Below are positions 13,271 to 57,435 of a stretch of 64,000 bases of DNA, piece by piece. This DNA comes from Macrostomum lignano. Taxonomy: Eukaryota. Location of the stretch: contig NIVC01000827.1 of NCBI GenBank assembly GCA_002269645.1, positions 339,929 to 403,928 of the forward strand, given 5' to 3'. The position numbers and the translations under genes are program-made. Each line of letters starts with the position of its first letter. Position 1 is the first letter of the stretch. A model generated the notes under the pieces. It saw only the letters and a list, made by a program, of their open reading frames with translations. It was not told the DNA's origin and did no database searches.

Positions 13271-13331
13271 AAAAGGTGGGCGGGGTGGCTGTCAATTCAA
13301 GCTTGAATGAGCAGAGTTAATTTATGGTCAC
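13271..13331. repeat. ~60-bp dispersed repeat with an inverted copy at 29165-29226
   Basis: GACCATAAATTAACTCT..GCTCATTCAAGCTTGAATT..CACCCCGCC.ACCTTTT is present on opposite strands at the two loci. Confidence 0.75.
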
Positions 13332-13659
13332 TGTCGTCAAGCCCCTTTTCTCCTTATGCGCATTGATTGTGACTAGTTGTGGATCGTTACACACAAGCCA
13401 ACCCTATAGAGTAACTTTTTTTTCAATTTAGGCCTACTGGTACGATTGAAAAGCAGACTATAGTCTAAATAACTGACTGGCTTGCATCGTGATAAAAATA
13501 TATTTATAACAGCTCACCTTAAAAGTCACATATCGTCATCTTTTGTCAGTCTTTTTCAGTTCCAACTTTTGGCCTATTGTTTCGGTTTGTATAGCGATAA
13601 AAACAGCACGCAAAGAACTCACTATAATGACTTAGCTTGCAAATAACTTCAATCACTCA

Positions 13660-14408
13660 CTCACTCACTCACACTCACCCACTCACTCACACTCACTCAC
13701 TCGCTCACACTCACCCACTCGCTCACACTCACCCACTCGCTCACACTCACTCACTCGCTCACACTCACTCACTCACACTCACTCACTCACTCACACTCAC
13801 CCACTCGCTCACACTCACTCACTCGCTCACACTCACTCACTCACACTCACCCACTCACTCACACTCACCCACTCGCTCACTCACACTCACTCAGTCGCTC
13901 ACAATCACCCACTCGCTCACACTCACTCACTCACACTCACTCACTCGCTCACACTCACCCACTCGCTCACACTCACCCACTCGCTCACACTCACTCACTC
14001 GCTCACACTCACTCACTCACACTCACTCACTCACTCACACTCACCCACTCGCTCACACTCACTCACTCGCTCACACTCACTCACTCACACTCACCCACTC
14101 ACTCACACTCACCCACTCGCTCACACTCACTCACTCGCTCACACTCACTCACTCGCGCTCACACTCACCCACTCGCTCACACTCACTCACTCACACTCAC
14201 TCAGTCGCTCACAATCACCCACTCGCTCACACTCACTCACTCACACTCACTCACTCGCTCACAATCACCCACTCGCTCGCACTCACTCACTCACACTCAC
14301 TCAGTCGCTCACAGTCATTCACTCGCTCACACTTACTCTCTCACTCGCTCACACTCACTCACAGTCACTCACTCGCTCACACTCACTCTCTCACTCGCTC
14401 ACACTCAC
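13660..14408. repeat. (CACT/CGCT)n complex microsatellite inside the Tc1-like element
   Basis: Read directly. Confidence 0.95.
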
Positions 14409-35757: not shown

Positions 35758-38700
35758 CCATTAGAAGAATCCGCCGCTTTCATCCAAGAGATTGATCCTT
35801 CAAAGCCTCTACCTGTTGATATTGAAGCTTTGCAAGCATTGAAATTTGAATCTGAGGATCCAGATGGTAAGAATTTTATTTTTTTTCTATTAGTTTTCTA
35901 CTACAGACAGAGACAGAGACAGAACATTTTTTAATCGGGCGTTTATGCACACACTGTGCTTTTGGGGTTGGTTGGTGCCATAATATTTGACAAACGGGTC
36001 AATAATTGCCACGGTCATTATATTTACCAAAGCTGACATAAACTTGCGCATTGCAGAATCCGCTCGCAGCTACAAAGAGGAGGGCAATTATCATTTCAAG
36101 CGTCGAGAATTTCAGTCGGCCAAGGAGAACTACACGGAAGGCCTGAAATCTGGCTGCAAAGATTCCGAAATGTTGGCAGTCTTGTACACCAACAGGGCTG
36201 CCGCCGACTTCCATCTGAAGAATTATGGTAGCTGTTATAAAGATTGCGCCAAGGCGAAGCAGCTTAAGCCTGATCATTACCGGTGAGAAACTGATTTTCT
36301 ATTTATGTTCTGTTCTGCTAAGTCTATGATATGTTCACTCTATCTATTCCGCATCTATCAACAATCTATCCCGCATCTATCAACAATCTATCGACCATCC
36401 ATTAACAATCTATATCTATAATCTATCAACAATCTATACCCCATCTATCCCGCATATATCAACAATGTATCCCACATCTATCAACAATCTATCCTTCATA
36501 TATCAACAATGTATCCTGAATCTATTAACAATCTATCGACCATCTATCAACAATCTATATCTATAATCTATCGACAATCTATCCCCTATCTATCCCGCAT
36601 CTATCAACAATCTATCGACCATCTATCAATAGTCTATATCTACAATCTATCAACAATCCATCCCGCATCTATCAACAATCCATCCCGCATCTATCAACAA
36701 TCCATCCCGCATCTATCAACAATCCATCCCGCATCTATCAACAATCCATCCCGCATCTATTAACAATCCATCCCGCATCTATTAACAATCCATCCCGCAT
36801 CTTCAACAATCCACCCCGCATCTATCAACAATCCATCCCGCATCTTCAACAATCCATCCCGCATCTATCAACAATCCATCCCGCATCTATCAACAATCCA
36901 TCCCGCATCTATCAACAATCCATCCCGCATCTATCAACAATCCATCCCGCATCTATCAACAATCCATCCCGCATCTATCAACAATCCATCCCGCATCTAT
37001 CAACAATCCACCCGCATCTATCAACAATCCATCCCGCATCTATCAACAATCCATCCCGCATCTATCAACAATCCATCCCGCATCTATCAACAATCTATCC
37101 CGCATCTATCAACAATCCATCCCGCATCTATCAACAATCCATCCCGCATCTATCAACAATCCATCCCGCATCTATTAACAATCCATCCCGCATCTTCAAC
37201 AATCCACCCCGCATCTATCAACAATCCATCCCGCATCTTCAACAATCCATCCCGCATCTATCAACAATCCATCCCGCATCTATCAACAATCCATCCCGCA
37301 TCTATCAACAATCCATCCCGCATCTATCAACAATCCATCCCGCATCTATCAACAATCCATCCCGCATCTATCAACAATCCATCCCGCATCTATCAACAAT
37401 CCACCCCGCATCTATCAACAATCCATCCCGCATCTATCAACAATCCATCCCGCATCTATCAACAATCCATCCCGCATCTATCAACAATCTATCCCGCATC
37501 TATCAACAATCCATCCCGCATCTATCAACAATCCATCCCGCATCTATCAACAATATATCCCGCATCTATCAACAATCTATCCCGCATCTATCAACAATCT
37601 ATCGACCATCTATCAACAATCTATATCTATAATCTATCAACAATCTATACCCCATCTATCCCGCATATATCAACAATGTATCCCGCATCTATCAACAATC
37701 TATCCCGCATCTATCAACAATCCATCCCGCATCTATCAACAATCCATCCCGCATCTATCAACAATCCATCCCGCATCTATCCAGAGCTCACGAGCGCGGC
37801 GCCCGAGCCCTACTGTCGTTGGAACGCCACGCCGACTGCGCCGCCTGGTGCGACGAAGCCCTCAGCCGGTGGGTCGCCGACCCGGAGCTTCTGCGCCTCT
37901 CCAGCCAGGCCCGCGCCGTCGCCGAGGCCAGCGCCGCCAAAGCGCGCCGCGAAGCCGCCGTTGGCAGGCGCGCCGAGCGCCAACTTGCCGGCGTGGCGGC
38001 CGCCCTCGCTCGCCGAGGCGTCCAAATCCGGCCGGGCACCGGGCGGCTGGAGATGCCCGACGATGCCAAAGTGGAGTTCGCGGCTGGCGACGCCGATGGC
38101 AACGGCGTGCTGCGCTATCCTGTGCTGCTGCTGTATCCTGAGTTTGGCCAGACTGATTTCCTGCGCGGAGTTGACGAGACAGCTAGCCTGGCTGAGGTTC
38201 GTGTTTCGATGGCTATTGTCTTGTTTACACCCATCAGCCCGTTGAAAACGATACCGTGACAAGAGTCGCTAAGAGTCATTTCAAACAGCTCACTAGTGAC
38301 TCTTGTAAGTCGGGCGACTCTTGTGACTTTTTAACAACTCAATCGCGTCACATGAGTTTTAGAATGGCCAGAGTCGCGAAAAAGCCGTCCAAGGATGCTG
38401 GCGTTTAACTTTCTACTAACTTAGTAGGCTAGTTAGAGTGCAATTAAAGTTCAGTAGGCTAAAACTGAGTGTTCATTACCCAATGAAAAGTCCAATAGAG
38501 TCGTTTCAGACGCGTTGCAGATGACACAGGTCAAATTAGAAAGAAGTGATTCTAAACGACTCTTAAAAACGACGAGATGTCCCAGTACAAGTCGCCAAAA
38601 AGTTCGCAGAAGAGGTGCTTTAGCGTCACTGTAAAATCGTTAGTGCATCACTTTTGAGTCGATGACCATGCATTTTCTATTCGCCCAGAAATGTCGATCC

Positions 38701-41700
38701 AGCAGTCTGTTTAAGGCCGATAGTAAGGACTCTGTAACGCGTCCAGAACGCCTCAGAAGTGACGCACTAACGATTGTACAGTGACGCAAAAGCGCTTATT
38801 CTGCGACTTTTTAGCGACTGCAGAACGCCGCTGAAACGCCGGAAATGTGGCTCTAATGCGACTCTACAACGCCTCGCTCAAATACGATCTTACGGCCCCA
38901 TAATCGTTACACCGTTGCCCCAGAGTCACTAGAGTCGCGCCAGAATCACTTGCGGCGCCCCAGAGTCGCAGACAAAACGCTTCAAAGCGACTATGGGACG
39001 CTTCTTGGCCTAGGTACCGTTTTCATCGGGCAGGGCTAATCCTCTTTTGAGGGCACGGAGAGTGTACATGTGTACATGCAACTTTTTAACAGTTTTGTCA
39101 TGAGCGCGTCACGTGAGTTTTACGAGCTAGAAATTATATACGAGTCCCGAAAGAACGACCAGGAATGGTTGTGCTGGCGCTTAACTTTTGCTAGATATGT
39201 GACTGATTCATCAACTTGCTTCAAACACAACCCAGTGACTCTATAGCTACTCTGGCACGCCTCAGATACGACTCCACCGCCTCAGAGTGGTTTCAGAGTC
39301 GCCAGGCAATAAGACACCTTAAATTCACTGTTAGGCGACTTTTTGACGACTTTTGGCGACTTTTACCGTGACTTCTCATCGTTTTAAAGTCGTCTAATAG
39401 AGTCACTTCTTTCCTAATTTACCTGTGTCATCTGCAACGACTCTGGGGCGGCGCAAGTGCCAGAGTGAGACGCTTCTTGGCCAGTGTTGCCACTGAGCAT
39501 TGTGACAAAAAAACGCTGACAGAAAAAAATAACACAGGGCATTTTCATCGTAGATATTACTAATATATTGTAACACCAATGATTAACAACAACGATAACA
39601 GTTGAAGACCAACCCCACCTAAAAATACCAAAGTGATAATTAACCAGTAAAGAGACTGAATAACAATTGGAATGACAACTCCTTTTCAATGTTCAATGTT
39701 CAATAGTGTAGCAGTCATAGTATGAGCGTAGTGAGTAGTCAATTTTTTTCTTTTTCGGAACATTCGGGAGACGAACAAGCGAAGCATGCTCCGCCTGTCG
39801 TTTCAATCTGGCAGCTTCCTCGGCTGTGCGTTGGATGACATTGTCCATGGCACGCTGTTCGATTACCAGCCGATCCGATGCAAATTGTGTCAGGCGCACA
39901 GCAACGTCCTGGTATTTTCCTTGCGCCTTGCGCAACCTCTCAATCGCTAGCTGAACTTCTCTTTCAGCCTCAAGGCACTCTGCAGCTGTTGCAGCCTTTT
40001 TAGCGACCTGTTTTTTTTGTTCTTCAGCAAGGCGCTCCAATGCAGTTTTTCGTTCGGCATCCTGTAGTTTTGTAGGGAGAAATAATAAATAAAAGGGATT
40101 ACTGCAAATCTTAGAAGTTAGCTCACTTAATTATTACCTTTTCAGCTTCTAGTCGCATTTTCTCCTGTTCCGCCTCAGCTGATTTACGAATAGCCGCCAG
40201 CTCATTTGCCTTCTTTTCGGCAGCCATATGCTGCTTGTATTGTGAGCTTGCCTTTAAAGCGGCCTGGATGAGCTCCTCGGGAATTGGCACATTTTTCGGC
40301 TTGAAGCTCCGAGCGCACAGAAAGCTGCGTGCCAAGAGTGAGTCGCGAAGTCTTTCGTCCGAGAGCCGATTTCGCTTTGAATTAACGCTAACATCATGCG
40401 ACTTTCCAATAAACCGCTCCGCATCTGCGTTCCCGTGAAATAGAGTACAGCACGCAGATGCAAGACGAGAAAGACGCGGGTACTTTCCTGTGTCTGCAGC
40501 CTTCCTCCAACCGCAGGCGATGTCACGATTGTCAGGCAAGAGGAGCTCACCACTTTTGGTTCGCAGATTCAGTAGCCTGACCTCAGAGGAAGCTTTTTGG
40601 CGATAAAAGTCACAGAATCTTCCTCAATTTCCCTTGAGAAGTCAAGGAACTTCATACTTCGCAGAATTTTCTTCTTCAGGGGCAGCTTTTCCTGCAAGTA
40701 TGCTGCCACCGCAATGTAAAATTGTTTAAAGCGATAAATGAGTGGCTTCTGCCGATCTTGCAGATTGTTTTGCTGCCCAATGGCAATACTAGACATAGGC
40801 AAGTGCAGGCTTTGGTTTTTGAAGTCAACGGAGACAACAGATTTTCTCTCGAAGGCAGATGGCTGCATAAACTGAATAGCTATCGACTCCAGAAGGGCGA
40901 TCAGCTCAGCATGCGATCGATGAATAAGAACTGTGCAGCTTTCTTGAAATGCGCTCTCAAAGCGGCTAGCAAGCTTCAGGGCGTGGATCGCAAAGCGTAC
41001 GCAAACTATGGTGTCTGGGTCTTGAAAGGCAGATCGGAGTCTTCGCATGCGCTTCGAATCGTCTGTGGACTGCGAAAGAAAAGCTGTCAGAGGAATCCAC
41101 TGTTCGATTATTCGCTCCAAACAGGGCAATAGAATTAGCCATCTTAACTCGACATTCCGCTTGAAAGCAAGTTGTGCAACGCCAATTTCTTGTTGGAGAG
41201 CCTTAAACTCTTTTCTGCGAGTGATGCTTCTGCTGAAACAAGCAAAAATGTCGTCGGCAAGATCGGAAACTTCCGAAAGATGGTTGTCACAAGCTTTGCG
41301 ATATGCGTTTGCAACAGTGTGGAGAGTGCAGCTTCCTACATCAATGAGATGCTCAAGCTCAGGAGTTTCACGTAGGATGGCACCAACTCCGGCATGTTCA
41401 CCAATCATTACGCTACACCCATCAGAAAAATTGCCAATCCACTTAGACAACGGCAGCTTGCTGTCCATTACACACTGACGAATAGCCTGAGCACATGAAG
41501 CAGCATCGAGACGTTCCAGTGGAAGTTGGTCAAGCATTTCAACCACGACTTTGCCCTCAGAGTTCAAATACCGCACGCAAATCATCATGAGACCATCACT
41601 CTCATCATAACTGATTGAATAGAAGCCAAATGATGACTCCACCTCCATGGCTTCTGCGCCCACAATTGACTCTGTTATTTGCTGCTTTTACATAGGGGAC

Positions 41701-44114
41701 AATAGCAAAAGTCAGCAAGTAGGCTTGCTTGGTGCGGCCACAAGAAAAGCCTGCTGCAATTTTTGAGTCTGGAAACATGGCTCTGAATAAATCAGGCGTT
41801 TCGTCTTCAGTGTTGAAGCTTTTCGACTTATACGCAGAGTTCCATACCCAGCGAATTTCAGCTAAGGTATTTTGCGCCGATTTGTTATCATTAGCAGATG
41901 AAGCACTATGCTTTGTGAAGAAAGCTGAGATTGATTTCTGCTGAAGTGCTGCAGCAGCATTCGACTCGTGAATTTTGGCTTTCATGTGCTGCTTGATTGC
42001 ACCAATGCCTCCACTTCCAACAAAAATTGGTCGATCGCACACATTGCAATATCCGTCAGTGTCAGAGTTGCCCTTTGTTAGCCATTTCTCGGCATTCAAA
42101 GTGGTAATCCAACTACTGGTAGGATCAAAGTTGGTCTGCCGAATGCGTTTAGAGTCAGTTGACTCAATGTTCGTGCTCATGCCTGCAGAGTCACTTTTTG
42201 TCTTTGCTGAGCTATTTGTGAATCAGTTAATCACTGGAATGCAAAATAAAAACAAAATAAAATGTTATAAATGTGTTTAAATTGTATGAAAAAAGATAAA
42301 TGATGAGAAACAATAAGACAATGTCATATTTTCAAGAATGGAGCTAAAATTACTGTTTATTTTAGTCTTTTTACTAATAAATACAGTAAAAATTTTAGGG
42401 TCATAATTATTCATTGAAAAAACGCCAGAAAAAGGAATTCAGCAAATAAAAACACAAAACGCCAAAAAACGCCAGTGTTAAAAAACGCCAAGAGTGGCAA
42501 CACTGTTCTTGGCTAAGGTACCGTTTGCATCGGCTAATCCATGGTTTTTGTGCATGGGTTAGCGTGGGGTAATCAACATCAATTATTCTGGTCGAATAGT
42601 CTCTGCAGTGTAACATGACAGTGATCCGAGTCAAAGACGACTTCAGTAAAACTGCACTTCTACGGCTATCATTGATTTTAGTATTTTACTGCAGTATTTA
42701 ACTGCCTGTTTACTGGGCATTAAGCGCTCACTGGATTTCCTTACCCACCTCTGGCAGCTCGTCTTAATCAGCCGCTGCTTGGAATCTGGCAGCACTCTGT
42801 ATGGCTTACATACCAGCAGAACAGTACTGTAAATTGTACAGTAGCTTTTCGCAAAACGATCTGTAAACTTGCAGAATTCTAAACTGCAAATTGCGCATAC
42901 GCGTGAGACCACAAATAATTAGCGTAAATTAAGTCGAAGAGCAGATTGGCATGTGATGTAAGTACATAATAGATAAATAGCAGATGAAAATGTTTTTCCT
43001 TTAACTTTTAACACTTTAAACTTTATTTAGCTTGGCAAACTCAGAGAACGCAAAAAAACACAAAACAACAGAACATGTTAAACAGCATTGGAAAACGTTG
43101 GAAAATGGTACTTAGAAATGAGAAAAATGTGTAAAAAGGTAAGCAAAATAGCAGACAGAAGAAGCTAAAATTTTCGCCTTAGCCATGAGAATACCCATGT
43201 CAATACCTTAAAGGCGACCAACCAAGGAGCTTCAGTGTGGAGGTGGTACCCCACCTACCCTACAGTCCTAACTTGCCCCCTACGACTTCTAGCTGTTCCT
43301 CAACATAAAGAACTTGAAGAAACTGCCTACAAGAACGACTCCAAGGTCAAGTAGGCAGTCGTCCGGGTATTCAACGCCATGTCCAAGAAGGAATTCGCCA
43401 CGGCCATCCACAAGTAGTGGAAGATGCGGTGGTTGATGAACAAGGAGAAAAAATGTCCGTAAAAAACTGTAAAAAACTCCGTAAAAAGTGTTGTTCGTAA
43501 AAACACCAATAAGAAAATGCGATAAAATAGTGAGGCAGTGTTTCCTTCTGTAAATAAGTATGAAACTAGAATTCAAATTAGCGCGAACAATCTTCCCACA
43601 CGCTTTTTCTACAATCGTTATCCATTCACGCAACTTTAGGTGTTCGTTGCGCTTGCGCGCGCTCAGAATCATTCAACCATGCCAGACTCCCACCCCATGT
43701 TTTATTATAGAGAAAGAGCTTTGTGGAGAGAAAAGCAACCATTCCCTTCCCCGATAGCAATATGTCCTTGCCTAGCCTTTCTTGGCTCATTTTACCTAGC
43801 CAGATTTAATAAACGTTTTGTCCAATCTACCTATTAATACCTGAGTTCCTCTGTTATTTCTCAGTTTAGAAAGATCTGCCAAATCCCTTTACATTCCTGC
43901 ACCACTCCCCGGCGAAATCATCCATCAGCCTTAGCCACCCGAATTTACTCGCTTCTACAATCCTCCCTTAACTCCCAAACGCCCTGTAAACCCTACCTGA
44001 AGTCCACCAGAAGTTACTCTGAAACTCACCTGAAGCCCCATGAAAGTCACCTTAAGCTTAGGAATCCACCTGAAGTGTCCTAATTCCCTATGAAATCGTG
44101 CTAATCCCCGTTCC

Positions 44115-44174
<60 letters not shown>

Positions 44175-47100
44175 AGGGCTTTCACCAGGCAACTTCAATC
44201 CATCCTGATACGCCCCACGGCTGCGTGACTAAAATCGGTAACCTTAGCCCTCGTGCCAGTAGAAATACCCCCCCCCGTCACCATTAGTCGTAGCTAGTGT
44301 CTTGCCTACCTACATTAGCGCTGCCAAGGTACGACCCGCATTGCGAGGAAGTCACCTATCCCCACCCTAAAGTACGCTACCAGATCACAACTCACACTCC
44401 TCCACCTAGATACAATTTCGAAATATCCAGCAGAAAATTAGACGGAGTTGATAGGGCTGTTACAATAGCGAGGGCAAGTGCAGAAATGCGTAGACAATAT
44501 ATCTAGATTATTAATGTAATGTATTAGAGAATACGCTGCTTCACATCACTTCTTTCGCGGCTGACCACCTTCCTGGTTGGAGTTGGCAGATGACACAAAA
44601 GTAACAACTTTGGCCGTATCCTTCGTGAATACTTGACGCAAGCAATTTCGGGCAGTCTCCCCAGCGCTGAGCCCTACATGTCTCTCCAACAGGCTCTTCA
44701 GCAACTTTCTGTTATCAGGAGTGGAAGCCCACTCCTCTGCACGCTCCATCTCTGGTAGGGATGTTGCTGGCAGCTTCACATCATCTGGCAGCTCGTCTAA
44801 ATCAGTCGCTGTTTGGAATCTGGCAGCACTCTGTATGGCTTGCAAAATCCGCGTCTGCACTTTGTTTTGAGCAATCACTTGGATCACAAAGTCACGGAGC
44901 TCTCGAATCTCCGCTTGACAAGAGCACGAGCAGCTACCAGTTGCAGCACCTGCAGGTAGTCCTTGATGATGTTCAGTTGGGCTGCTGCTTGTGCCCGCGA
45001 GCTGTGCGACGCCAGCCGTAGTAGCACAATTTGCTGAAGTCGCATACGCACATGACAGAGTCCCTTCTTCAGAGAGGTTTACTATGTTATAAACTGCAGG
45101 CTCAGATTCTGGATCTAAAACACTGGCACGTAGGTCGAATTGACCTGCCATTGGATAGGGCGGGGCATGGACACCGATTACTTTCCCAGTTGTTACTTCC
45201 TGATTGTAGTCGCGCCTGCAGCGCGGAGCTCCGCCGTTGCATCAGAAACATCGGATTCAGTTTGTATATGGGCTGGGAAAGTGCATCTAGCGTTAGAACT
45301 CCTGAACCTCTGGCGAAAGAACTTCAGCATATCGGCTACCTTTGCCTCTTTTTCATAGCGCAGAGACCTCGCCTGCTTTAAAGATGCAGCGAGGCTATCA
45401 TGCGAGTGTGCGATCTGCAGGACCACACCCTCAGCCCTCCAATCAGAAGTAGTGCAGATCACAGATACTTCTTCGTCACAGTTGTTGTTCCACTCATCAG
45501 GAGTCCAGTTTTTGCAGCGATCCGGCAAATCAAGCATAACTATTGGTGCGATAAAAAAGCTTTGGTCTGTGCGAAAAAAAGCAGAAAGTGTGTATTTTCC
45601 ATCGCGCTTCAAGCAGTTGGCTGCAATTGTGCAAATGCGAAATGGCGTACATTTTCCCTAGTCAAGTTGAATTGGGAAAAATACTTGTTCATTGTCGACG
45701 GTGGGTAGGCACATATAAAAAAATCGTACAGCTTTTACAGGCACAAAGTGAATACAATCTTCCTCTCTAAATTTCGAATTGTCCCCTTGATGTCTTAGCT
45801 TACGAAAAAATAAAGAAAAGATTCCTAGTTCTGATGAAACTACAGAGTACTCATAGGCATCCTTTGCTAAATCCAGTTGCAATTTCTTTGCAGACAAAAT
45901 GCTTTCCGATTCAGTTCTAATTACTACTTTAAGTCGATAGATTTCTTTAAACGATATCGCAAAAAAACTGTCCATGCTGGTCTTTGCAGCACACTCTTAC
46001 GTTGTCAAATGTAATTGACTTGAATAGCGAAGCCGATCGCATTTCGTCGGGCAAAAAATTCAGGGCGAAGCGCACTTGTTTTTAATTCTTATTGATGTTT
46101 TATCACTGCTTCTTGACAACCTGCTCGTTCTAACCAAGTTTCTAACCTGCTGTGCTGAAAGGTAGGGAGACTTAATTGCCTTCTTTAGGAGCAAAAAAAA
46201 GTTTTCGAATGGAAAAGCACTCATTGGATGAAGTGAGAGCTTGTGGTTCTTGACATCATCAGGCACATGTGCCAGGCTGTGAACGTTAATAGAAAAGAAA
46301 CTAGCACCATAAATAATGCGCGAATGCCTCAGAAATTCGTCTATGCACTTCTTTGCCAAGTCCAAGTGTGTCACACAAAGGACGCTGTCTGAAAGAACGA
46401 AGAATGCAACATGCAGAAGCAGGAAGTTGCAAAAAGTGGCATCAGACAAGCTTCCTTCAAAAACCACTACTCCAGTGAACTTAAGTAACAAAGCGAATTC
46501 CGTTCCTTGAATTTGTTTACGAATTGCAAACTACGTGCCTTTTGACTAAAGCAGTTCTTCACTGATTCCATGCTACGCTGCAGCTTTCTATTTATAGTGC
46601 GAATAACTAATGAAGGGAGGCGGCATGCCACAGAACCTTGGCTAATCCAGAAGTTGAGTGTCCTACGCATTACACCTAAAAGTATTAGATGCATGGGATC
46701 CAAAATAAAATCTTCACCATGTCGACTTTAAGTTCCTCTAGAATGGATACCCCATTGTGATGTTATTGGTCAGTCTTATCTCGAAAATTCTTGTATGTGC
46801 GAGCATGTGCCGTCAATTCATCGAAAATGACTGTCCGACGGTCATGTTCATAGAAACCTTCAACCTCGCACCGCTCAACACGCAGAATAGCCTGTGTGAC
46901 ATTTTGTGCACTTGAAAAGTGCGCGTGCAGGTGTGTCGCAGATAAAGATAACCTTGACATTGGACAAATGGATGTCATGAAGAACAAGAGACTTTGATTC
47001 ACAAATGGGTTTTAGTTCATCTACAAAAGATCGCAAGAAGCTACTAGGATCAGGCTTGCATGAACCGGAATAGAATTGCACCAAAATTGGTTCTTCTTTG

Positions 47101-50100
47101 ATAGGATACAACTGCATTAATATTGTCCACGTGTGCTTGTCTCTACTTGAATGCAGGTCTACCCCATCAAAGTGAAACTTCAGTATCAGTCCTGACTTCA
47201 TGTGATCAGAAAGTTCATTACTTCTTAGCTCCCGCTCAAGAGACTGAAGAATAGTAAAATTGTGTTGCGAATATTCTGCCCTAATGTCTGACACAATTTC
47301 ACCTTGAAATGGTGCATGTCGTGACAAGAGTGTCTCGATACTCAGTGGAAGATTCACATGGAACTTTCTTAACTCAGACAGCAGGTCATTGCATGCTGTC
47401 TTTGATACAGACGGGTTCCTTCTAAACCAGCTAACTATTGCTAATTCAAAATCGTCCCTAGTACAATCAGTCTCAACACTATCCAAAGAAGATGACTTGC
47501 TAATGCAATCAGGATATGCTTTAGTTCCAATGTCAGAATTGTCGCTTTCATTTGCCCCATCTGGTGCACAAAAGTTCATTGGCTTCTTCCATTGGTGAAC
47601 TATGTTTTATCTCATACTCATTATAGGCGCTAGAGCCACTAGTAGATTCAACTCCCTGGTATCTACTGGTATTTTGGGACGGTTCATTTTCTTCTGGGCT
47701 ACCTTGCAGTCCACGTGTTTTTATTTCTTGTCTTTCATAATAGGTCTTGTCCCAAAGCTGCCGTTTCATTTTTGCTGAAAGGTTAGAGAATGATTGCTAG
47801 ATTCCCATACAATGTTGAAAATTATGATTAGCTAGCTCAATTAGTAGAGCATCTACCACTGTTACAAGTAGCAAAATTGGGCTTGATTTTCAAGAATAGA
47901 AATATAGATAAGAATTTGCTATGACCCTCTAGTCCTGAAAGACAGGATAATAAACTAGAGCCTTGATAAGTAAGCCACTTAAGCCACAGAAACCACTACC
48001 AAACAGCTACCCTAACACTGCCAATTAACATTTACTACATGCTACTTGGTAAGTACACAAAAGAGAATAAGCAGACGATAGAATTAGAGGGAATTTAGTA
48101 AGTTACCCATAGATAAAATGGCCCTTTTAAGGGACATTTTTTGTCAAATGCTACTAGGAAGTGAGAGGAAACTAGTAATACTTAGGTAGGAAGTAATTTA
48201 AATAATCAGTTATATTGAGATAGTAATAACCTGCAGAAGAAAACCCTGTAACACTTTAGTCAAACTAGTTATGATTAGGTATCAACACATACTATCTTTC
48301 TTAGACAATGGCTTTATATATACACAACTACAGGAAGCCAACTCCATATTTCTAAACTAGAATGAGAGTACAATATGGCTTGTAGAAGTATTAGCAATTG
48401 TTATGATTTGTGTTTTTGCTACTTTATATAGCTAAATAGCTATATCGCTATATATAGCAGAGCTAGTTGCAATTTCATTTCAAAGTGACTAATCATGATT
48501 TTTAACTGCCAATAAATGAATCGATTTTTTACCCATTTAGGCTTGGTAAGCCAACTTAGAATCTAACATTATTTGATAGACTAGCACTTTTATCTTCTAG
48601 AAACTATTTTATCTAATTTTTAAGGTAATAAATGTTTTTGCCATTATATCTTATATTACTAACGAACTGAACAAACACCTTTGTTGCCTAATATAAAATG
48701 AATATATTCATAAAATTATAGCTAAAAGCTGTTTTGCCTTGGACTAATGTAGAATAATTAAAGCTATATATATTTATACTAATAGTATATGGTTTAGAAA
48801 GTATATAATGTATATAGTGTAGAAAACTAAAGTATATTTTGACTAATTATGATGAAATTTAGGGCTAACATAAGTCTAAAACACTTTTAAATCAAAAGTT
48901 TATTATATATAACAGCTCTTTGCAAAACACAAAGATGTTATTTTTGTTGGTCCAAAATATTTAGGTTAATTGTGAAACCTCTTAGTGCAAAGGAAGGTTA
49001 AAAAAACAAAAAATGACTAGTAATAAAGTAAAAAGGATAAGTGACAATTTATCATTATTTTGAGAATTGCTCTACTATATTTCAAATCATAGACTACATA
49101 CTTCAGGAGCAAATTATCTACTTTTTTCCTATCTTAAAACAGTACTATTAATTAATTATAATACATAAAAAACAATATATAGTTATTAATATAAATTGCA
49201 ATACTAAGCTTCTAAAATGCATAGTACTCTATAGATAATATAGACTTATATTATTAATTTATAGGCCTAAGGTATATTATAATTTCTACAATAAAAGCTT
49301 TTTGTCCCTGGCCATAATTTGGCTATGCCTACTCAAATTTCTTTCTAATTTGATCCACTGATTCATCAATTTGTCTATATCTTTCAACCCAGCGAACCTA
49401 GCCTAACTACCCAGCTAGCAGTTAGATATCAATATGATAAACCAAGAAGCTAATTCCATTGCAATGGTCATGTGGTGATATGCTACGACAGGCTGCAGAT
49501 GTTATAACATGTTACAAAACAGTAAAGTATTTTAAATTAAATTCATTCACTAGGCCTATGTTAGGCCTATTGTTCTTTGCGATTCTTGCAGTTTTATTTG
49601 TTTCGTATCAACGTCCTGCATAGCCAAAAATATCCAGCAGAAGATGGACATTGATTGCAGAAGATAATAAAATCACAAATTAGTTTTAATCGACTGTCTT
49701 TCATGTCTGCCAAATCTGCCATGCCCATGATATCGGTTCTTAAATATTAAACTTTCATGTGAGGTGGGGGCGGAGAAAGTTTTGTTTGGAAATTGGTCGG
49801 TTACTGTCACCAGTGAGGTGGGGTGGATTCCACGTTTGAATTCCCGCCGGCGTTGCGTTCGCACGAATAAATCCAGAAAATCGCGCAGACGAATCACAAC
49901 GAATTTCTTTCTCCTGTTTTACTCCGACTGTCCTCAAGTTCCGGGGGGAGGTTAGTCGTAATCGTAGCGGAGCGGTCGTTAGCGGCACGGTCGTTCAAAT
50001 AGTAGACGCCGGAGATTCTGATACCGAAAACTAATGCGTCGAGTTGCTGAGCTTATTACTCTCAGTAGTGTAGAGCTGCCACCACCGTAATTTACGTATT

Positions 50101-51475
50101 ACGGAACGAATAAGTCTCGGAGCTTTCTTTGAGCTTAGAACTTCGTTTGTTTTACGCCCCGTGGGCAAAGAACTCAAGATAGGCTATTGCTTATGGATCA
50201 ACGAATAAGTAGGATGTAGTTTATTTATTAGATATTATTTAATGTCAGTTATTAATTCGCAAGCAGTTTGGGATAGCTGATTAAACGACTGAGATGAATT
50301 GCGACGGCACCGGGGTGCTAAATTATAATAGAAAACTCTCTGATTAATGAACTTATTAAACTTGGTTAACAGTCGAAGCAAGTAAATAATTGGGTGCACG
50401 AATCAGCAAAGGAAAAGGTAAAGGAAGTAGAGGAACGGGGGAACTGGGAATGAAATTGCACATGAAACAAGGGGGGGTTTAAATAGAGACAGCAAGCAGT
50501 TCCGCGGGTGGGAGCAGCTGCTGGAAGCCACGGTGGGCACACTGGTCACAGCATGGGCAGTAACAAAAAAACCCGGGACAATAGTGCAGTTTAACAAACT
50601 TCCACAAAAGGATAATATTTATCAACGCGTGGAACATGCGGTGGAGCGATGTCTGGGAAACCCAAAACAAGCCACACAGGGGAAACTTCAGCGGACAGCG
50701 CGGGGACGACTAATTGCAAAATTAACAGTTAATTAGAGTTTCAATTTACAGTGGCATCCCGCCTGCCACACATGTTAAACTGCAAAAACAAAGCTTTTAA
50801 AATCAAATTTGTTTATAAAAACAATTTTCATTTATTTAATTCAACCGCTTAGTGGAAGTAAAATTAGTTCTTATGCTACACATAATTGTCTTTTTGCTTT
50901 GGTCTTCGAATTAAGAGGCACTACGCCTTCAGCTTGTCTTAAAGAGCTTTCCCAGTAAATGCGCAGTAATTAAGTTTTGCCGATGTGCACATGCAGTATG
51001 TCACTGCTGTTTTACTTAGGTTCCGAGACAGTAAAAAATACCTAAGTAAAATACTGCTGTTCTACTGCAGTTTGATAAGAATATTTTTTGGGGACAGAGA
51101 TGTTGATGGTTGGTACGCTCGTAGATGTGGGTTGAGATGGCTATCATTTTAAATTCAATGTTTCCAATTAGCGCATAATTAAATTATCTCAAGGTGGCGG
51201 CAACCGTGTTTGATCCTAGTCAGCCACCGGCAGCCTGGAACTCAGCTAAAGCCTACAATCCAGACAGTGCTCTCTTCTACCTAGACTGCAGCAGCACCTC
51301 CGATTCAGCGGCAACATCAAAGGCTAAACCTGAGACGCTTGATAAACGCCTAACCTTGGCCCAGGTGTTAAAACGACCAGAGGCTGCTCTGACTGGCTCT
51401 GTACTGCTGTTGACTGTACTGCGGGCGGGACCTTATCACGACCGCTGGCTTAAGGAGTGGTGGGATTCGCAGTGA
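35758..51475 (+). CDS. TTC4: TTC4/Cns1 TPR Hsp70/Hsp90 co-chaperone; exons 35758-35866, 36057-36282, 37785-38196, 51194-51475; no ATG in the first exon found
   Basis: IEALQALKFE; ARSYKEEGNYHFK...YTEGL...LYTNRAAA (TPR); WCDEAL; LRYPVLLLYPEFGQTDFL; C-terminal PPAAWNSAKAY; intron phases 1, 2, 0 join cleanly (1029 nt). Confidence 0.92.
36345..37780. repeat. 22-bp minisatellite (ATCCATCCCGCATCTATCAACA) filling TTC4 intron 2
   Basis: About 60 copies; the last unit runs directly into the CCAG acceptor. Confidence 0.96.
38237..39031. mobile_element. Non-autonomous TIR element (GCCCG[T/A]TGAAAACG[A/G]TACC ends) rich in GAGTCGC/GCGACTC motifs; a second diverged copy at ~39090-39481 + 42514-42540
   Basis: Inverted ends at 38237 and 39031; internal similarity between 38320-38420 and 39090-39190; TSD unclear. 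Confidence 0.65.
39482..42505 (-). mobile_element. Near full-length hAT transposon, 3024 bp; transposase with two frame disruptions
   Basis: TIR CAGTGTTGCCACT / AGTGGCAACACTG; perfect 8-bp TSD TTCTTGGC; BED-like CNVC..H..H finger, FPDSKIA..FSCGRTK, SISYDES, SDG, CTLH, HGNADAERF dimerisation region (ORFs 42180-41605, 41663-40569, 40539-40123, 40040-39693). Confidence 0.93.
43240..43430 (+). mobile_element. Mariner transposase C-terminal relic
   Basis: VVPHLPYSPNLAPYDF*LF resembles the HPPYSPDLAPSDF motif; contains stop codons. Confidence 0.75.
44546..47769 (-). mobile_element. Degenerate CACTA/EnSpm transposon: Tnp2-type transposase (47769-~46060) plus second ORF(s) (~45975-44546); termini not located
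   Basis: FHFDGVDL, KPD..FL..FVDEL, ICDTPARA, CTKC, DPMHLILLG, FLLLHVA, NVHSLAH...AFPFEN; multiple frameshifts; a duplicate ORF2 fragment at ~42740-42810. Confidence 0.88.
49915..50750 (-). mobile_element. Solo-LTR-like sequence, with a block related to the U5 of the 6247 LTR
   Basis: Minus-strand start TGTAAAT; CTATTTAAAC TATA-like box at ~50480; TGGCAGC.CTAC..CTACTGAGAGT block resembles 7128-7157. Boundaries and TSD not confirmed. Confidence 0.35.
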
Positions 51476-52419: not shown

Positions 52420-52457
52420 AAAATTGTTAACAAAGACACAGTCACCTGACTGATTGA

Positions 52458-53021
52458 TTGCTGGATTGGCCATCCATCCGTCGCTTATTATTCTACCCAG
52501 CTGTCACCAAGTCGCTGACGTGGCGACTGCTTGGCCTGTCTGACTGGTACAACCGTATCGATGAGCATCTCGTGCTGGGCGCGCTGCCATTGGCTAGAGA
52601 ATTCCAGTCTGTAGCAAAATCTGAGAGCATCAAAGCTGTACTGAGTATAAACGAACCGCACGAGGTTAAGCCGGCTTGGGTTGTTGGGGAGAAAGAGTGC
52701 CGCAGGCTGGGCCTAGCTCGGATGCAACTATCTGTACCAGATTTTGGCGGTCATTCGCCAAGCGCTAGACAGTTGCAGAAATGCTGCGATTTTATCGAAT
52801 CAACGGTTGTTAAGGGCGGCAGCGTGTACTTGCACTGCAGAGCTGGTAGGACTCGAAGCGGCACAGTGGCCGCGGCTTATCTAATGCGGCGCCATCGGTC
52901 CCTGGCGCCAGTGGATGCGTGCGATAGATTGCGCGCCAAACGGCCCAGCTTACTGTTGAATCGGCCTCAGCTGGATGCGCTGCACGAATTCTGGAGATTA
53001 GAGCAGGCTAGAGAAAGATGA
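52458..53021 (+). CDS. PTPMT1: PTPMT1 mitochondrial phosphatidylglycerophosphatase (dual-specificity phosphatase fold), single exon, no in-frame ATG
   Basis: RRLLFYP; WYNRIDEHLVLGALP; NEPHE; VPDF; catalytic loop VYLHCRAGRTRSGT (HCxxGxxRS); stop 53019-53021. Confidence 0.9.
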   Translation: MLDWPSIRRLLFYPAVTKSLTWRLLGLSDWYNRIDEHLVLGALPLAREFQSVAKSESIKAVLSINEPHEVKPAWVVGEKECRRLGLARMQLSVPDFGGHSPSARQLQKCCDFIESTVVKGGSVYLHCRAGRTRSGTVAAAYLMRRHRSLAPVDACDRLRAKRPSLLLNRPQLDALHEFWRLEQARER

Positions 53022-53438
53022 ATTCGATTTTTTACTGCGCTTGTAAAATCCCTAGATATTTGCTAGCATTTGAGTTTCCTAATTAAACAGATTAATCCAT
53101 AATGAAGTTGTCTGTAAAGTTTTTGGTCTCGTCGTTTTTCAATAATTTCTTTAATTTTTTACCATTTTGAATGCTTTGCACTACTAAAATAGTAATCTGT
53201 AGGGTAGGCGCGCCTCACTTCCTTGAAGAATCTCCACCAATTCCCCTGAAGTATATCCACCAATTCCTCTAAAGAATCTCCACCCGTTCCCCTGAAGAAT
53301 CTCCATTAATTCCCCTGAAGAATCTTCACCAATTCCTTTAAAATATATATATATCTTACATTTAATTTAGGTTTCGCAGCAGACAATGTAATTCATTGTA
53401 ATTGCTACGTAATTATTTTGTACTTTAATTTATTTCAG

Positions 53439-56400
53439 GAGAATTCAAAGCCGTATACAGCCTTGCTGCTGTTTCGTTTCTTTTTTATATTTTTGCCACA
53501 AACTGGCTATCTGCATCCGGATGAGTTTATGCAGTCAATTGAGATTTCTGCGGGTAAGAAATATATTTGTTTTCTTCCCTCCCACTAGCGCACGAACCGC
53601 CCCCTCAATTTATTTCCCTGCCCGCTAGCACACTAACCACCCCCTCAATTTATTTCTCTGCCCGCTAGTGCACTAACCACCCCCCTCAATTTATTTCTCT
53701 GCCCGCTTGCACACTAACCACCCCCCCCCTCAGTTTATTTCCCTGCCCGCTAGCGCACTAACCACCCCCCTCAATTTATTTCTCTGCCCGCTTGCACACT
53801 AACCACCCCCCTCAGTTTATTTCCCTGCCCGCTAGCGCACTAACCACCCCCCTTAATTTATTTCTCTGGCCGCTTGCACACTAACCACCCCCCTTAATTT
53901 ATTTCTCTGACCATTTTTATGACCAACCGACCAGCTACCAAGCTAGCAAGCTGTGTAACCGTATGTATTTCTATCTTTGAAAATCGCAGGCGACCTCCTC
54001 GGTGTCCGAACCAGCTCGCCACCCTGGGAGTTCACCGTTGATCGTCCAATCCGTAGCGCCGCCATACTCCATCTGTTCTATCACGGCCCGCTACTATTAT
54101 TTAAACATCTGCTAGTGGACGGTTTCTCTTGGTACGTTGACGCCTACTTTGTTGTGATAGTCACCCGGCTGTCTATAGCAGTTTTGTCGCTAGCAAATGA
54201 CGCTATGGTAGCATTACTGGCTAGAGAGCTCGGTCTGGACACGTTTCGCTGCCTGTTCCTCTACTCTTCATCGTACATAGTCATGGTGCACGGTACTAGA
54301 ACTCTGAGCAATGCCATTGAGTCGAGTCTTCTAGCTATTGTTTTTATCTGCCTACTGTTTGCCTTGAATGCCTATTCCGCGCCTGGCAATAGTCGTCATA
54401 CACTAGTAAAGGTGCTCCTATCAACAGCCGGAATTGTCACCGCTATCGGGGTTATGAATCGGCCAACTTTTGTCGCCTTCGCCGCTGTGCCCTATCTCTA
54501 CACAGCCTGGCGTTGCGCCCGCTCGCTAGTCGATCCTATTGGCGCCTGTTTCAATTTTGGCGCCACAATTCTGGCCGCATTTAGCGCCGCATTTGTCTCG
54601 TTAGTGTTGTACGATACGCTGACTTTTAATCCGACATTTGCTAGCAGATTCGCCTCGTTGGGTATGGACGAATTTCTAACCGTGAATGGCGCTTTCGATT
54701 TCCTGTCAGATTTTGCGCGATCGGCTGTTGTAACACCCTGGAACTTTGTTAGGTAGGCAGTGCCTGTTTTCCAATGATATTTATGCAGTTCACAATATCC
54801 TAGGAACCTATCACACTCCGCTTTCCTACCCCTTATACAGCCACCTCACTCCGCTTTCCTACCCCTTAAGCAGCCACCTCACTCCGCTTTCCTACCCTTT
54901 ATGCACCCACCTCACTCCGCTTTCCTACCCTTTATGCACCCACCTCACTCCGCTTTCCTACCCTTTATGCACCCACCTCACTCCGCTTTCCTACCCTTAT
55001 GCACCCACCTCACTCCGCTTTCCTAACCCCCTGTCGTAACCCGGGTCGGTTCGGGTGCCCAGCCCAAATAAAATACGGTGGTACCTGCAGGCGTTGTGAC
55101 GCTCTGCCAATATGGTATTACTGCTGACAGGCGTTATGACGCTCTGAGTACCAGGTTGCTCGTTCTGGCGTGATGACGCTCAGAACTAGCGTTGCCCCCA
55201 GAGGTGTTGCGACACTCTGGTGCTTATACAGTGGGTATACAGTATAAGTAAAAATAAAGTATGATATACAGGGTCCGCTCTCCTGGCGTTATGACGCTTT
55301 GGCGAGAATTTACTGTAATCTCTCAAGCTTCCCAGGAAAGACTGTGTTAAAACAGGCGGCTTACCGGTAGCCGAGTTATGAGATGCGCGTTTGCCCTGTG
55401 GCCGAGCTATCAGATGCACGTGTACCCTTTTTGGGTCGTTGTTGATTTTATTTGACGCGTTGAACAACTTGAGACTTTGTTAAAGTCACAGTACGAAGGA
55501 GCAAGAAAATTCCGAAGAAAAAAAGGCGAGTCAGAAAAACCTGGAGCGCAAATTAATATTAAATACCACCACAGGCTTAGGTTTAAGGGGGGGGCAGATG
55601 GCTTCACCGGCTGAGCCCACAAAAATTAGAGCAAAATAACAAACGCACTGGTCAGCCAATCAAAACCCCGCCTAGGGGGGGGGGGCGCTCCCACGCTAAA
55701 GCCGGCCCGGCCGCAGCCAACCAGCCCTGAGCACGGGGCAGGGGACACGGCTAGGGAGGGGCACGCGCAAAGCCCGGCCGCCAGCCAGACCCTGCCACGC
55801 CCGCCAACCCCCTTGCCAGCCCCAAAGTGCATCGCGCCCTGCAAACCGACAAGGGCGCATGCACTACACCCTTATGCACCCATCTCACTCCGCTTTCCTA
55901 CCCCTTATGCAGCCACCTCACTCTGCTTTCCTACCCCCTTATGCACCCACCTCACTCTGCTTTCCTACCCCTTATGCACCCACCTCAGTCCGCTTTCCTA
56001 CCCCCTTATGCACCCACTTCACTCTGCTTTCCTACCCCTTATGCACCCACCTCAGTCCGCTTTCCTACCCCCTTATGCACCCACTTCACTCTGCTTTCCT
56101 ACCCCCTTATGCACCCACCTCAGTCCGCTTTCCTACCCCCTTATGCACCCACCTCACTTCGCTTTATTTCCACCCTTACCTCACCATTTCTCTTTCCTCA
56201 GCTACAACTCTCAATCGGAGAACCTGGCTCAACACGGTACACACCCTCGCTGGCTTCACCTGATCAATCTGGCTTTGTTGCTAGGCCCAGCTGCCCCAGT
56301 ATTCGTCCGTCACGCCTGGGCTACTCTACGACAGTCGGCTCAGCAGCAGCAGCAACAGCAGCAGCAGCTCAGTAAAGCTATTGTTCTCGCCTGTCTAGTA

Positions 56401-57054
56401 CCTTTAGCCGCTCTATCACTGTTTCCGCATCAGGAGCTTCGCTTCTTAGTCCCGCTGTTGCCCTTAGCAACCGTGTGCGTCGCTCAACGACTCCGCTGTC
56501 GCCTGCCAATATTTAGCTTCGCCTTGCCCTGGATCGCTTTCAACGCTATCGCCGTGATTGGCTTGGGATTTCTGCACCAGGGCGGCGTCCTCCCCATGAC
56601 CGCTCATGTTGGCGAGCTGATTCGCTCGACCAATAGTCGACTGCAGCCACAGCAGGAGCCTCTCTGCCATCGGTTGCTGTTCCTAGGCACTTATCCGCCG
56701 CCGCAGCACACCCTGCTACTGCCGCAGTCTACCTGTGTACAACTCGAAGATCTCATGGGCAACCGGACTGCGCTGGAGTCCCGGGCTGCCCAGCTTCGAT
56801 CGGATCGAGTCGCCTCAGTCTATGCCGTGTTCTCCGCAGTTCACGCCGATCCCGTTAGAGCCGCATTCGCTAAATCTCGCTACGGTTTAAAGTACGCAGC
56901 CAGGGTGTACGGCCACCTGTCCGCTGAGAGCCTACCCCCGGCCAGGAGAGTGTTGGCGCGCCTGTCCGAGTCTTCTTCGCCAGTTGTCGAAGCCGGACGA
57001 TCGCTGTCCGAGGCTCTGTCCATTATGGTGTTTCATCTTGTGTTAACCGCCTAA
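53439..57054 (+). CDS. PIGZ: PIGZ/SMP3 GPI mannosyltransferase 4; exons 53439-53553, 53990-54752, 56202-57054; no ATG in exon 1
   Basis: PQTGYLHPDEFMQS; PPWEF...PIRS; TRTLSNAIES; NRPTF; YN..NLAQHGTHPRWLH; FPHQELRFLVP; GFLHQGGVLP; phases 1 and 2 join cleanly (1731 nt, 576 codons plus stop). Confidence 0.95.
53570..53905. repeat. ~41-bp minisatellite in PIGZ intron 1
   Basis: GCACTAACCACCCCCCTCAATTTATTTCTCTGCCCGCT units. Confidence 0.92.
54810..56165. repeat. 32-33-bp minisatellite in PIGZ intron 2, split by an ~840-bp TG...CA insertion (55032-55868)
   Basis: CACCCACCTCACTCCGCTTTCCTACCCCTTATG units on both sides of the unique insert. Confidence 0.88.
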
Positions 57055-57109
57055 CTTGCTGGTTCTTCTGTCATAGAGCTCTGGAGGTAGGGAAATTTCT
57101 ATCTCACTC

Positions 57110-57435
57110 CATTTTCCTGTCCCTAGACACCCACCTCACTCCACTTTCTAGCCCCTAGACACCCACCTCACTCCACCTTCTAGCCCCTAGACACCCACCT
57201 CACTCCACTTTCTAGCCCCTAGACACCCACCTCACTCCACTTTCTAGCCCCTAGACACCCACCTCACTCCATTTTCTAGCGCTAGACACCCACCTCACTC
57301 CACTTTCTAGCCCCTAGACACCCACCTCACTCCATTTTCTAGCGCTAGACACCCACCTCACTCCACTTTCTAGCCCCTAGACACCCACCTCACTCCATTT
57401 TCTAGCGCTAGACACCCACCTCACTCCATTTTCTA
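57110..57435. repeat. 32-bp minisatellite sharing the CACCCACCTCACTCC core with the PIGZ intron-2 repeat
   Basis: CCCCTAGACACCCACCTCACTCCACTTTCTAG units. Confidence 0.92.

What the first reader, a model, noticed from the sequence alone, without database searches (positions are those of the whole stretch)
53400..53553. PIGZ exon 1 has no ATG but opens in frame at a 3' splice site: start codon probably donated by a spliced leader
Seen: a strong acceptor (tactttaatttatttcag|) is followed at phase 0 by GAG AAT TCA AAG CCG TAT..., giving ENSKPYTALLLFRFFFIFLPQTGYLHPDEF. This is the expected extreme N-terminus of PIGZ/SMP3, yet there is no in-frame ATG before the HPDE motif. Known: flatworm spliced-leader exons end in AUG, which can act as the initiator Met (shown in Schistosoma). 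Inference: SL-AUG + this exon gives M-ENSKPY..., 577 aa, close to the usual PIGZ length, so translation would depend on trans-splicing.
Basis: partly seen in the sequence, partly recalled or inferred. Interest (0 to 1): 0.85.

Follow-up and report, generated by a model that had tools for sequence, protein, structure and literature searches.

The report
Flatworm PIGZ gene lacking start codon
This Macrostomum lignano gene for a GPI-anchor mannosyltransferase has no start codon of its own and almost certainly gets its AUG from the trans-spliced leader RNA, a mechanism already known in flatworms, so it is a clean example and not a new phenomenon.

Summary
The window is Macrostomum lignano scaffold NIVC01000827.1. 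A TTTCAG acceptor ends at 53438. The exon after it (53439-53553) opens at phase 0 with ENSKPY…HPDEF. Three exons give 576 codons plus a stop, identical to GenBank PAA76372.1 (Mlig016694.g3, "partial"), whose CDS starts exactly at 53439. The frame has a TGA at 53316 and no ATG before the catalytic HPDE motif. The first genomic in-frame ATG (53529) lies after that motif.

The published M. lignano spliced leader (SL) ends in ATG. The published trans-splice acceptor motif, [T/C]TNCAG, fits this site. At two duplicated loci the annotation puts the upstream phosphatase gene and PIGZ in one transcriptional unit (g1/g2). Adding one Met places the HPDE histidine at residue 27, against 24-28 in the closest orthologues, all of which start with Met.

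I could reach no read-level SL junction, so trans-splicing at 53439 is inferred from the annotation and the sequence. SL-AUG initiation was shown in Schistosoma in 2006, and the M. lignano SL's ATG is already labelled a start codon in print. This is a new member of a known kind, of modest interest, mainly useful for correcting "partial" annotations.

The parts
52464..53021 (+). Upstream single-exon gene for a PTPMT1-like dual-specificity phosphatase (185-aa GenBank CDS, 'partial'). It is the neighbouring gene in the same transcriptional unit.
   Evidence: Pfam DSPc at 3.5e-15. Called gene at L001 9026-9583, which equals window 52464-53021. The duplicated copies are named Mlig019743g1 and Mlig024868g1.
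53022..53438 (+). Intercistronic region, or outron, of 417 nt. It holds an ATTAAA poly(A) signal at 53082 and a 23-nt tandem repeat at 53224-53336.
   Evidence: It meets the published operon criterion of a repeat-adjusted distance under 1 kb (PMC8629364).
53316..53318 (+). In-frame TGA that closes the PIGZ frame upstream of the acceptor.
   Evidence: Frame translation.
53421..53438 (+). Pyrimidine/T-rich tract ending in TTTCAG, the inferred SL trans-splice acceptor.
   Evidence: Among the AG dinucleotides scanned between 53100 and 53470 it is the only one that matches [T/C]TNCAG. It and three AGs inside exon 1 (53442, 53451, 53461) are the only ones after which an SL-ATG fusion reads through to the exon 1 donor.
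53439..53553 (+). PIGZ exon 1. It starts at phase 0, encodes ENSKPY…TM1…HPDEF…, and ends at a GTAAGA donor.
   Evidence: The GenBank CDS PAA76372.1 starts at this base.
53529..53531 (+). First genomic in-frame ATG. It lies downstream of the HPDE motif and so cannot give a full enzyme.
   Evidence: Orthologues have F at this position (HPDEFFQS).
53554..53989 (+). Intron 1, containing a 41-nt tandem repeat array at 53581-53909.
53990..54752 (+). PIGZ exon 2.
   Evidence: with splice sites cag|GCGACC and TTAG|gtaggc. The protein is identical to P0043.
54753..56201 (+). Intron 2, rich in 33-34-nt tandem repeats.
56202..57054 (+). PIGZ exon 3, including the TAA stop. It contains a CAG-encoded Q9 tract.

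Best explanation
PIGZ (GPI mannosyltransferase 4, a GT22 enzyme) of Macrostomum lignano is the downstream gene of a small operon shared with a PTPMT1-like phosphatase gene. The polycistronic precursor is resolved by trans-splicing the 35-nt spliced leader onto the TTTCAG acceptor at 53438. The leader ends in AUG and contains no other AUG, so the mature mRNA begins with 32 nt of leader followed by AUG|GAG AAU UCA…. Scanning ribosomes therefore start at the leader's AUG and make M-ENSKPY…, 577 aa. Without trans-splicing there is no AUG that can produce the first transmembrane helix and the catalytic HPDE loop. Shown here: the gene structure, the missing genomic ATG, the reading frame, the acceptor motif, the species and its leader sequence, the shared transcriptional unit in the published annotation, and orthologue N-terminal lengths. 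Inferred: that the SL is actually joined at 53439, and that its AUG is the initiator.
For: The gene model and the lack of an in-frame ATG come. Species identity and exact identity to GenBank PAA76372.1 (Mlig016694g3, partial), with the CDS starting at 53439, come. A second copy (Mlig024868g2) also starts at ENSKPY. The SL sequence ending in ATG, the SL donor ATG|GTAAG, the acceptor motif [T/C]TNCAG and the operon criterion come from PMC8629364. The annotation pipeline cuts transcriptional units at SL-read peaks and poly(A) sites (PMC5730564). The phosphatase gene and PIGZ carry the same transcriptional-unit prefix as g1/g2 at two duplicated loci. The stop-to-acceptor gap is 417 nt, of which 113 nt is tandem repeat. 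With one added Met, the H of HPDE falls at residue 27. It is at 24-28 in mollusc, chelicerate and vertebrate PIGZ, all of which start with Met. Between the window copy and a duplicate there are 6 synonymous and 2 non-synonymous differences and the ORF is intact, so the gene is under constraint. The acceptor and exon 1 are conserved in all three copies, with only a synonymous AAT/AAC change. There is precedent: more than 40 Schistosoma mansoni cDNAs need the SL AUG (Cheng et al. 2006, as summarised in PMC9851317).
Against: No SL-containing read or cDNA spanning SL|GAGAATTC could be retrieved. The exact 577-aa M-ENSKPY protein is not in the 15-billion-protein collection, and no RNA-derived contigs for this gene or its neighbour were found. 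The third copy's GenBank CDS starts 18 nt further in, at TALLL. The neighbouring phosphatase gene's annotated start has no AG acceptor before it. Annotated 5' boundaries are therefore not always true SL sites. The 15 nt ending at 53439 resemble the SL 3' end at 12 of 15 positions, so mis-parsed reads cannot be fully excluded. Fixed trimming of such reads would put the boundary at 53440, which does not fit a CDS starting at 53439.
Confidence: 0.8

Rival explanations
1. A short upstream first exon carrying a genomic ATG is cis-spliced to the 53438 acceptor. The reader's candidate is ATGAAGTTGTCT|GTAAAG at 53102-53113, which would give MKLS-ENSKPY….
For: The candidate exists, is open and is at phase 0. 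Two more weak candidates start at 53171. The candidate is retained in all three copies, but the copies are about 98-99% identical, so this says little.
Against: All intergenic candidate donors are weak. GTAAAG lacks the G at +5 of the published GT[G/A]AG consensus. The candidate lies 14 nt past the end of the upstream gene's ATTAAA poly(A) signal, so it sits in or at the end of that gene's 3' UTR with no room for a promoter. Orthologues need no extra N-terminal residues. The GenBank model has no such exon and starts at 53439.
Confidence: 0.07
2. Translation does not use an SL AUG. It starts either at a near-cognate codon in an unspliced leader, such as the in-frame TTG at 53418, or at the internal ATG at 53529, giving an N-terminally truncated protein.
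For: An in-frame TTG exists at 53418. An in-frame ATG exists at 53529.
Against: Starting at 53529 would delete TM1 and the HPDE motif, which is present in all but four N-terminally truncated homologues among those examined. An out-of-frame ATG at 53523 precedes it. The TTG lies inside the polypyrimidine tract of a consensus acceptor that the annotation treats as the transcript boundary. Near-cognate starts are inefficient, whereas an AUG is supplied whenever the SL is added.
Confidence: 0.06
3. The locus is a 5'-truncated or decaying gene copy, and the apparent 'complete minus ATG' state is an artefact of annotation or assembly.
For: GenBank flags all copies as partial. One copy (L003) has a 1-nt gap in exon 3 and a truncated 380-aa product. 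The assembly is highly duplicated (PMC5730564).
Against: Two copies keep an intact 576-codon ORF, with 6 synonymous and 2 non-synonymous differences between them. The N-terminus aligns end to end with orthologues and nothing is missing except the Met. All splice sites are canonical.
Confidence: 0.04

Closest known systems
SL-AUG-initiated mRNAs of Schistosoma mansoni (Cheng, Cohen, Ndegwa and Davis 2006, J Biol Chem 281:733; cited in PMC12582326 and PMC9851317)
   Same: The flatworm spliced leader ends in AUG. The AUG is in frame with the ORF at the acceptor. The recipient gene has no genomic initiator for the conserved N-terminus.
   Different: The species here is a free-living macrostomorphan. 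The gene is PIGZ. No experimental proof of the junction or of initiation is available here, whereas the Schistosoma work tested translation directly.
slORFs: open reading frames created by SL addition (slORFfinder, PMC9851317)
   Same: The start codon is supplied by the leader, and the ORF exists only on the trans-spliced mRNA.
   Different: That survey identified slORFs in nematodes, trypanosomes and Oikopleura, and stressed that non-canonical NUG codons in leaders can start translation. Here the ORF is the canonical, conserved protein, started by a true AUG.
Macrostomum lignano operons resolved by SL trans-splicing (Ustyantsev and Berezikov 2021, PMC8629364; Wudarski et al. 2017, PMC5730564)
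   Same: The genes are on the same strand with a short repeat-adjusted spacer. The downstream gene has a YTNCAG acceptor. Both genes are named gN of one transcriptional unit.
   Different: In the passages I read, those papers describe trans-splicing frequency and operons but do not discuss genes that depend on the leader's AUG. The GenBank records simply call such CDSs 'partial'.

Membership tests
SL-AUG-initiated flatworm mRNA | The species trans-splices a leader whose last three bases are AUG | tested here: met
   The window is M. lignano scaffold NIVC01000827.1. The published SL is …TTATTGCATG (PMC8629364; PMC10468722).
SL-AUG-initiated flatworm mRNA | The leader is joined to an acceptor immediately 5' of the ORF | not testable with these tools
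   No SL reads are reachable. Indirect support: the TTTCAG site matches the trans-splice motif, the GenBank 5'-partial CDS begins at 53439 in two of three copies, and the gene is g2 or g3 of a cut transcriptional unit.
SL-AUG-initiated flatworm mRNA | The leader AUG is in frame with the conserved ORF, with no stop between them | tested here: met
   ATG|GAG AAT TCA… is at phase 0 and gives a 577-aa product.
SL-AUG-initiated flatworm mRNA | No genomic in-frame AUG can give the full conserved N-terminus | tested here: met
   There is a TGA at 53316 and no ATG up to 53529, which lies after HPDE. The same holds in the two duplicated copies.
SL-AUG-initiated flatworm mRNA | Translation actually initiates at the leader AUG | not testable with these tools
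   This needs ribosome profiling, N-terminal proteomics or a reporter assay.
PIGZ / SMP3 (GT22 GPI mannosyltransferase 4) | Glyco_transf_22 domain over most of the protein | tested here: met
   PF03901 at E=1.2e-51, residues 6-436.
PIGZ / SMP3 (GT22 GPI mannosyltransferase 4) | HPDE motif in the first luminal loop after TM1 | tested here: met
   LPQTGYLHPDEF aligns with LPQTGY[IL]HPDEF of orthologues.
PIGZ / SMP3 (GT22 GPI mannosyltransferase 4) | Closest relatives are PIGZ and not PIGB, ALG9 or ALG12 | tested here: met
   Hits with functional names are 'GPI mannosyltransferase 4', 'PIG class Z' or the generic 'mannosyltransferase', and the yeast hits include an SMP3-type alpha-1,2 mannosyltransferase. 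No formal phylogeny was made.
PIGZ / SMP3 (GT22 GPI mannosyltransferase 4) | Adds the fourth mannose to the GPI precursor | not testable with these tools
   This is a biochemical assay.
M. lignano SL-resolved operon | Same strand, with a repeat-adjusted intergenic distance under 1 kb | tested here: met
   417 nt from stop to acceptor, including 113 nt of tandem repeat. The criterion is from PMC8629364.
M. lignano SL-resolved operon | Both genes lie in one RNA-seq-derived transcriptional unit | tested here: met
   Mlig019743 g1 is the phosphatase gene and g2 is PIGZ. The same holds for Mlig024868 g1/g2. The window's PIGZ is Mlig016694 g3 (naming per PMC5730564).

The most novel reading that the evidence does not exclude
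PIGZ depends obligately on the leader's AUG in all three genomic copies. If so, the genomic start codon was lost before the recent duplications, and translation of this operon's downstream gene is gated by trans-splicing. By extension, a sizeable share of the M. lignano CDSs that GenBank flags as 'partial' may be complete SL-AUG-initiated genes. That would show the initiator role of the flatworm SL AUG in Macrostomorpha, outside the parasitic lineages where it was demonstrated.
Probability: 0.5. Interest if true: 0.4.

Novelty: new member of a known kind. Interest (0 to 1): 0.3.

Why it matters
The finding explains why GenBank lists this conserved enzyme as "partial": the CDS is complete once the leader's ATG is added. 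That gives a simple rule for repairing M. lignano gene models: a 5'-partial CDS that starts at phase 0 directly after a YTNCAG trans-splice site should have Met prepended. It also gives a clean candidate in a transgenesis-capable flatworm for testing SL-AUG initiation directly, and for asking whether trans-splicing gates translation of downstream operon genes. It does not reveal a new mechanism.

Tried and rejected
1. I looked for direct RNA evidence. The exact M-ENSKPY 577-aa protein is not in the 15-billion-protein collection. The PIGZ and phosphatase homologue searches returned only GenBank/UniRef M. lignano entries and no RNA-derived contigs.

2. I looked for other Macrostomum or flatworm PIGZ sequences to compare N-termini. 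None was identifiable among the 150 best of 1.84 billion representatives. Apart from the M. lignano entry itself, the highest identity is 42%, over partial matches; of the ten representatives I looked up, the named ones are molluscs, annelids and arthropods.

3. I searched supplementary tables for a trans-splicing flag on Mlig016694, Mlig019743 or Mlig024868. Nothing was held. Wasik et al. 2015 is not in the library.

4. I searched for an SL RNA gene or SL copy in the window and found none.

5. I tested whether the upstream phosphatase gene is a retrogene carrying a relic SL. Alignment of the SL to its 45-nt upstream flank scores only at about the 90th percentile of the window background, so I rejected this as unsupported.

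6. I considered that the annotated boundary at 53439 is an artefact of the SL-like 15-mer at 53425-53439. Trimming on that match would place the transcript start at 53440 and the CDS at NSKPY, which is not what GenBank shows.

7. I ran no further search on an N-terminal fragment, because made success very unlikely.

Full report
**What is in the sequence.** At 53421-53438 the + strand reads tactttaatttatttcag and is followed at 53439 by GAG AAT TCA AAG CCG TAT…. The exon runs to 53553 and ends at a GTAAGA donor. Two further exons follow, at 53990-54752 and 56202-57054, with canonical cag| acceptors and one more GT donor. Together the three exons give 1731 nt, or 576 codons plus TAA. In the same frame upstream there is a TGA at 53316-53318 and no ATG between it and the exon. 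The first in-frame genomic ATG is 53529-53531, the M in HPDEF-M-QS. An out-of-frame ATG at 53523 precedes it.

**What the gene is.** The protein matches Pfam Glyco_transf_22 (PF03901) at 1.2e-51. Its named homologues are GPI mannosyltransferase 4 / PIGZ, and the fungal hits include an SMP3-type enzyme. The LPQTGYLHPDEF segment aligns with the LPQTGY[IL]HPDEF segment of orthologues.

**Where the window comes from.** The protein is 100% identical over its full length to GenBank PAA76372.1, "BOX15_Mlig016694g3, partial [Macrostomum lignano]". The encoding contig, NIVC01000827.1 of assembly GCA_002269645.1, is base-for-base identical to the window over 20.5 kb. Window position 53439 is record position 393367. 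The GenBank CDS begins exactly at 53439. Two duplicated copies exist:
- L003 (Mlig024868g2) also starts at ENSKPY.
- L002 (Mlig019743g2) starts 18 nt further in, at TALLL.

**The leader.** M. lignano has one 35-nt spliced leader, CGGTCTCTTACTGCGAAGACTCAATTTATTGCATG. In the SL RNA gene it is followed by the donor GTAAG. The motif enriched at trans-splice acceptors is [T/C]TNCAG (PMC8629364). Our site, TTTCAG, fits. Of the AG dinucleotides scanned between 53100 and 53470, it is the only one with that motif. It and three AGs inside exon 1 (53442, 53451, 53461) are the only ones after which an SL-ATG fusion reads through to the exon 1 donor. The leader has no other ATG, so on a trans-spliced mRNA the terminal AUG is the first AUG, with G at +4. 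A later Macrostomum genome paper labels this ATG "translation start codon" (PMC10468722).

**Operon context.** Upstream, at 52464-53021, lies a single-exon PTPMT1-like dual-specificity phosphatase gene (Pfam DSPc).
- Its stop is 417 nt from the PIGZ acceptor.
- The spacer contains an ATTAAA signal at 53082 and 113 nt of 23-nt tandem repeat.
- This is within the published operon criterion of under 1 kb after subtracting repeats.
- The Mlig_3_7 annotation assembles "transcriptional units" and cuts them into genes (g1, g2, …) at SL-read peaks and poly(A) sites (PMC5730564).
- At the two duplicated loci the phosphatase gene is g1 and PIGZ is g2 of the same unit. In the window PIGZ is g3.

The published annotation therefore treats these genes as one primary transcript that is cut before PIGZ.

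**N-terminal completeness.** Thirty-five homologues start with Met and have a locatable HPDE motif. In these, the H of HPDE lies at residue 18-80. In the nearest groups (molluscs, chelicerates, vertebrates) it is at residue 24-28. With one Met added, the M. lignano value is 27. HMMER alignments of the best representatives start at query residue 4-9 against subject residue 2-8. Nothing is missing except the initiator, and there is no homology-based need for another upstream coding exon.

**Is the gene alive?** The window copy and L002 differ by 6 synonymous and 2 non-synonymous substitutions, and both ORFs are intact. The acceptor and exon 1 are conserved in all three copies, with one synonymous AAT/AAC change.

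**Mechanism.** The operon precursor is trans-spliced at 53438|53439. The leader supplies the cap, a 32-nt 5' UTR and the AUG, and translation yields M-ENSKPY…. Un-trans-spliced RNA cannot make a protein containing TM1 and the HPDE loop. The trans-splicing event and initiation at the SL AUG are inferred. The rest is shown. I put the confidence at about 0.8.

**Weak points.**
- I found no read-level junction. The collections hold no RNA-derived M. lignano sequences for this gene or its neighbour.
- Annotated 5' ends are not infallible. L002's CDS starts 18 nt downstream although its sequence there is identical to L003's.
- The phosphatase gene's annotated CDS starts at GAT in all copies with no AG before it.
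- The 15 nt ending at 53439 match the SL 3' end at 12 of 15 positions. There are 5 such hits in the window against 2.9 expected. Much of this is inherent to a TTNCAG|G acceptor. Trimming on that match would shift the boundary to 53440, which contradicts the GenBank CDS.

**Rivals.**
- A cis-spliced ATG mini-exon (53102-53113 or 53171-…) has weak donors. It sits just past the upstream gene's poly(A) signal and is not needed by homology. Confidence about 0.07.
- Non-AUG or internal initiation would be inefficient, or would delete the catalytic motif. Confidence about 0.06.
- A decaying or truncated copy is contradicted by the substitution pattern and by the end-to-end alignment with orthologues. 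Confidence about 0.04.

**Comparison with what is known.** Cheng et al. 2006 showed that the flatworm SL 3'-terminal AUG acts as an initiator methionine. They reported it in frame in 28% of trans-spliced S. mansoni transcripts and required by more than 40 cDNAs, as summarised in PMC9851317 (see also PMC12582326, and PMC5832876). M. lignano trans-splicing and operons are well described. The papers I could search say nothing about which M. lignano genes depend on the SL AUG, and GenBank labels this CDS "partial". The finding is therefore a new, well-supported member of a known kind. Its main uses are correcting annotation and serving as a test case in a flatworm where transgenesis works. Interest is 0.3.

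Noticed in passing
window 52455-52466 (compare L002 9001-9012 and L003 9016-9027): The upstream phosphatase gene has gattCATG|GAT in both duplicated copies but gattGCTG|GAT in the window, so the window copy has CTG where the others have the ATG start. GenBank starts the 'partial' CDS at GAT in all three copies, although no AG acceptor precedes it. The window's TTGCTG is one base away from the trans-splice motif TTGCAG. The reason for the annotated boundary, and how the window copy is translated, are unexplained.
   Followed up: partly
window 53425-53439: TTAATTTATTTCAGG matches the last 15 nt of the spliced leader (TCAATTTATTGCATG) at 12 of 15 positions and ends exactly on the first exon base. 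This is probably acceptor-tract composition: the window has 5 such hits against 2.9 expected.
   Followed up: partly
window 53436-53441: CAGGAG is a NAGNAG tandem acceptor. Trans-splicing at 53442 instead of 53439 would stay in frame and give M-NSKPY…, one residue shorter.
   Followed up: no
L003 about 13017-13870 (PIGZ exon 3 of copy NIVC01000082.1): This copy shows a 1-nt gap relative to the window in exon 3, and its GenBank protein stops at 380 aa. It is either a frameshifted duplicate or an assembly error.
   Followed up: no
window 53581-53909, 54814-55030, 55864-56165, 57103-57435: Both PIGZ introns and its 3' flank are filled with related C-rich tandem repeats with 32-41-nt units, in 6 to 10 copies each. 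A different 23-nt repeat lies in the intercistronic spacer at 53224-53336.
   Followed up: no
window 35797-51475: An upstream gene on the same strand has a Cns1/TTC4-type 'Wheel' domain and is presumably g1 of the same transcriptional unit in the window. Its GenBank CDS in copy L003 starts mid-exon without an AG or an ATG, which shows that many 'partial' models in this annotation are simply truncated.
   Followed up: partly
searches from the window PIGZ: No PIGZ from any other flatworm was identifiable among the named homologues or the ten best-scoring representatives I looked up. Apart from the M. lignano entry itself, no hit exceeds 42% identity, and the named ones are molluscs, annelids and arthropods. 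Either other flatworm sequences are absent from these libraries or the gene is lost or highly diverged in them.
   Followed up: no
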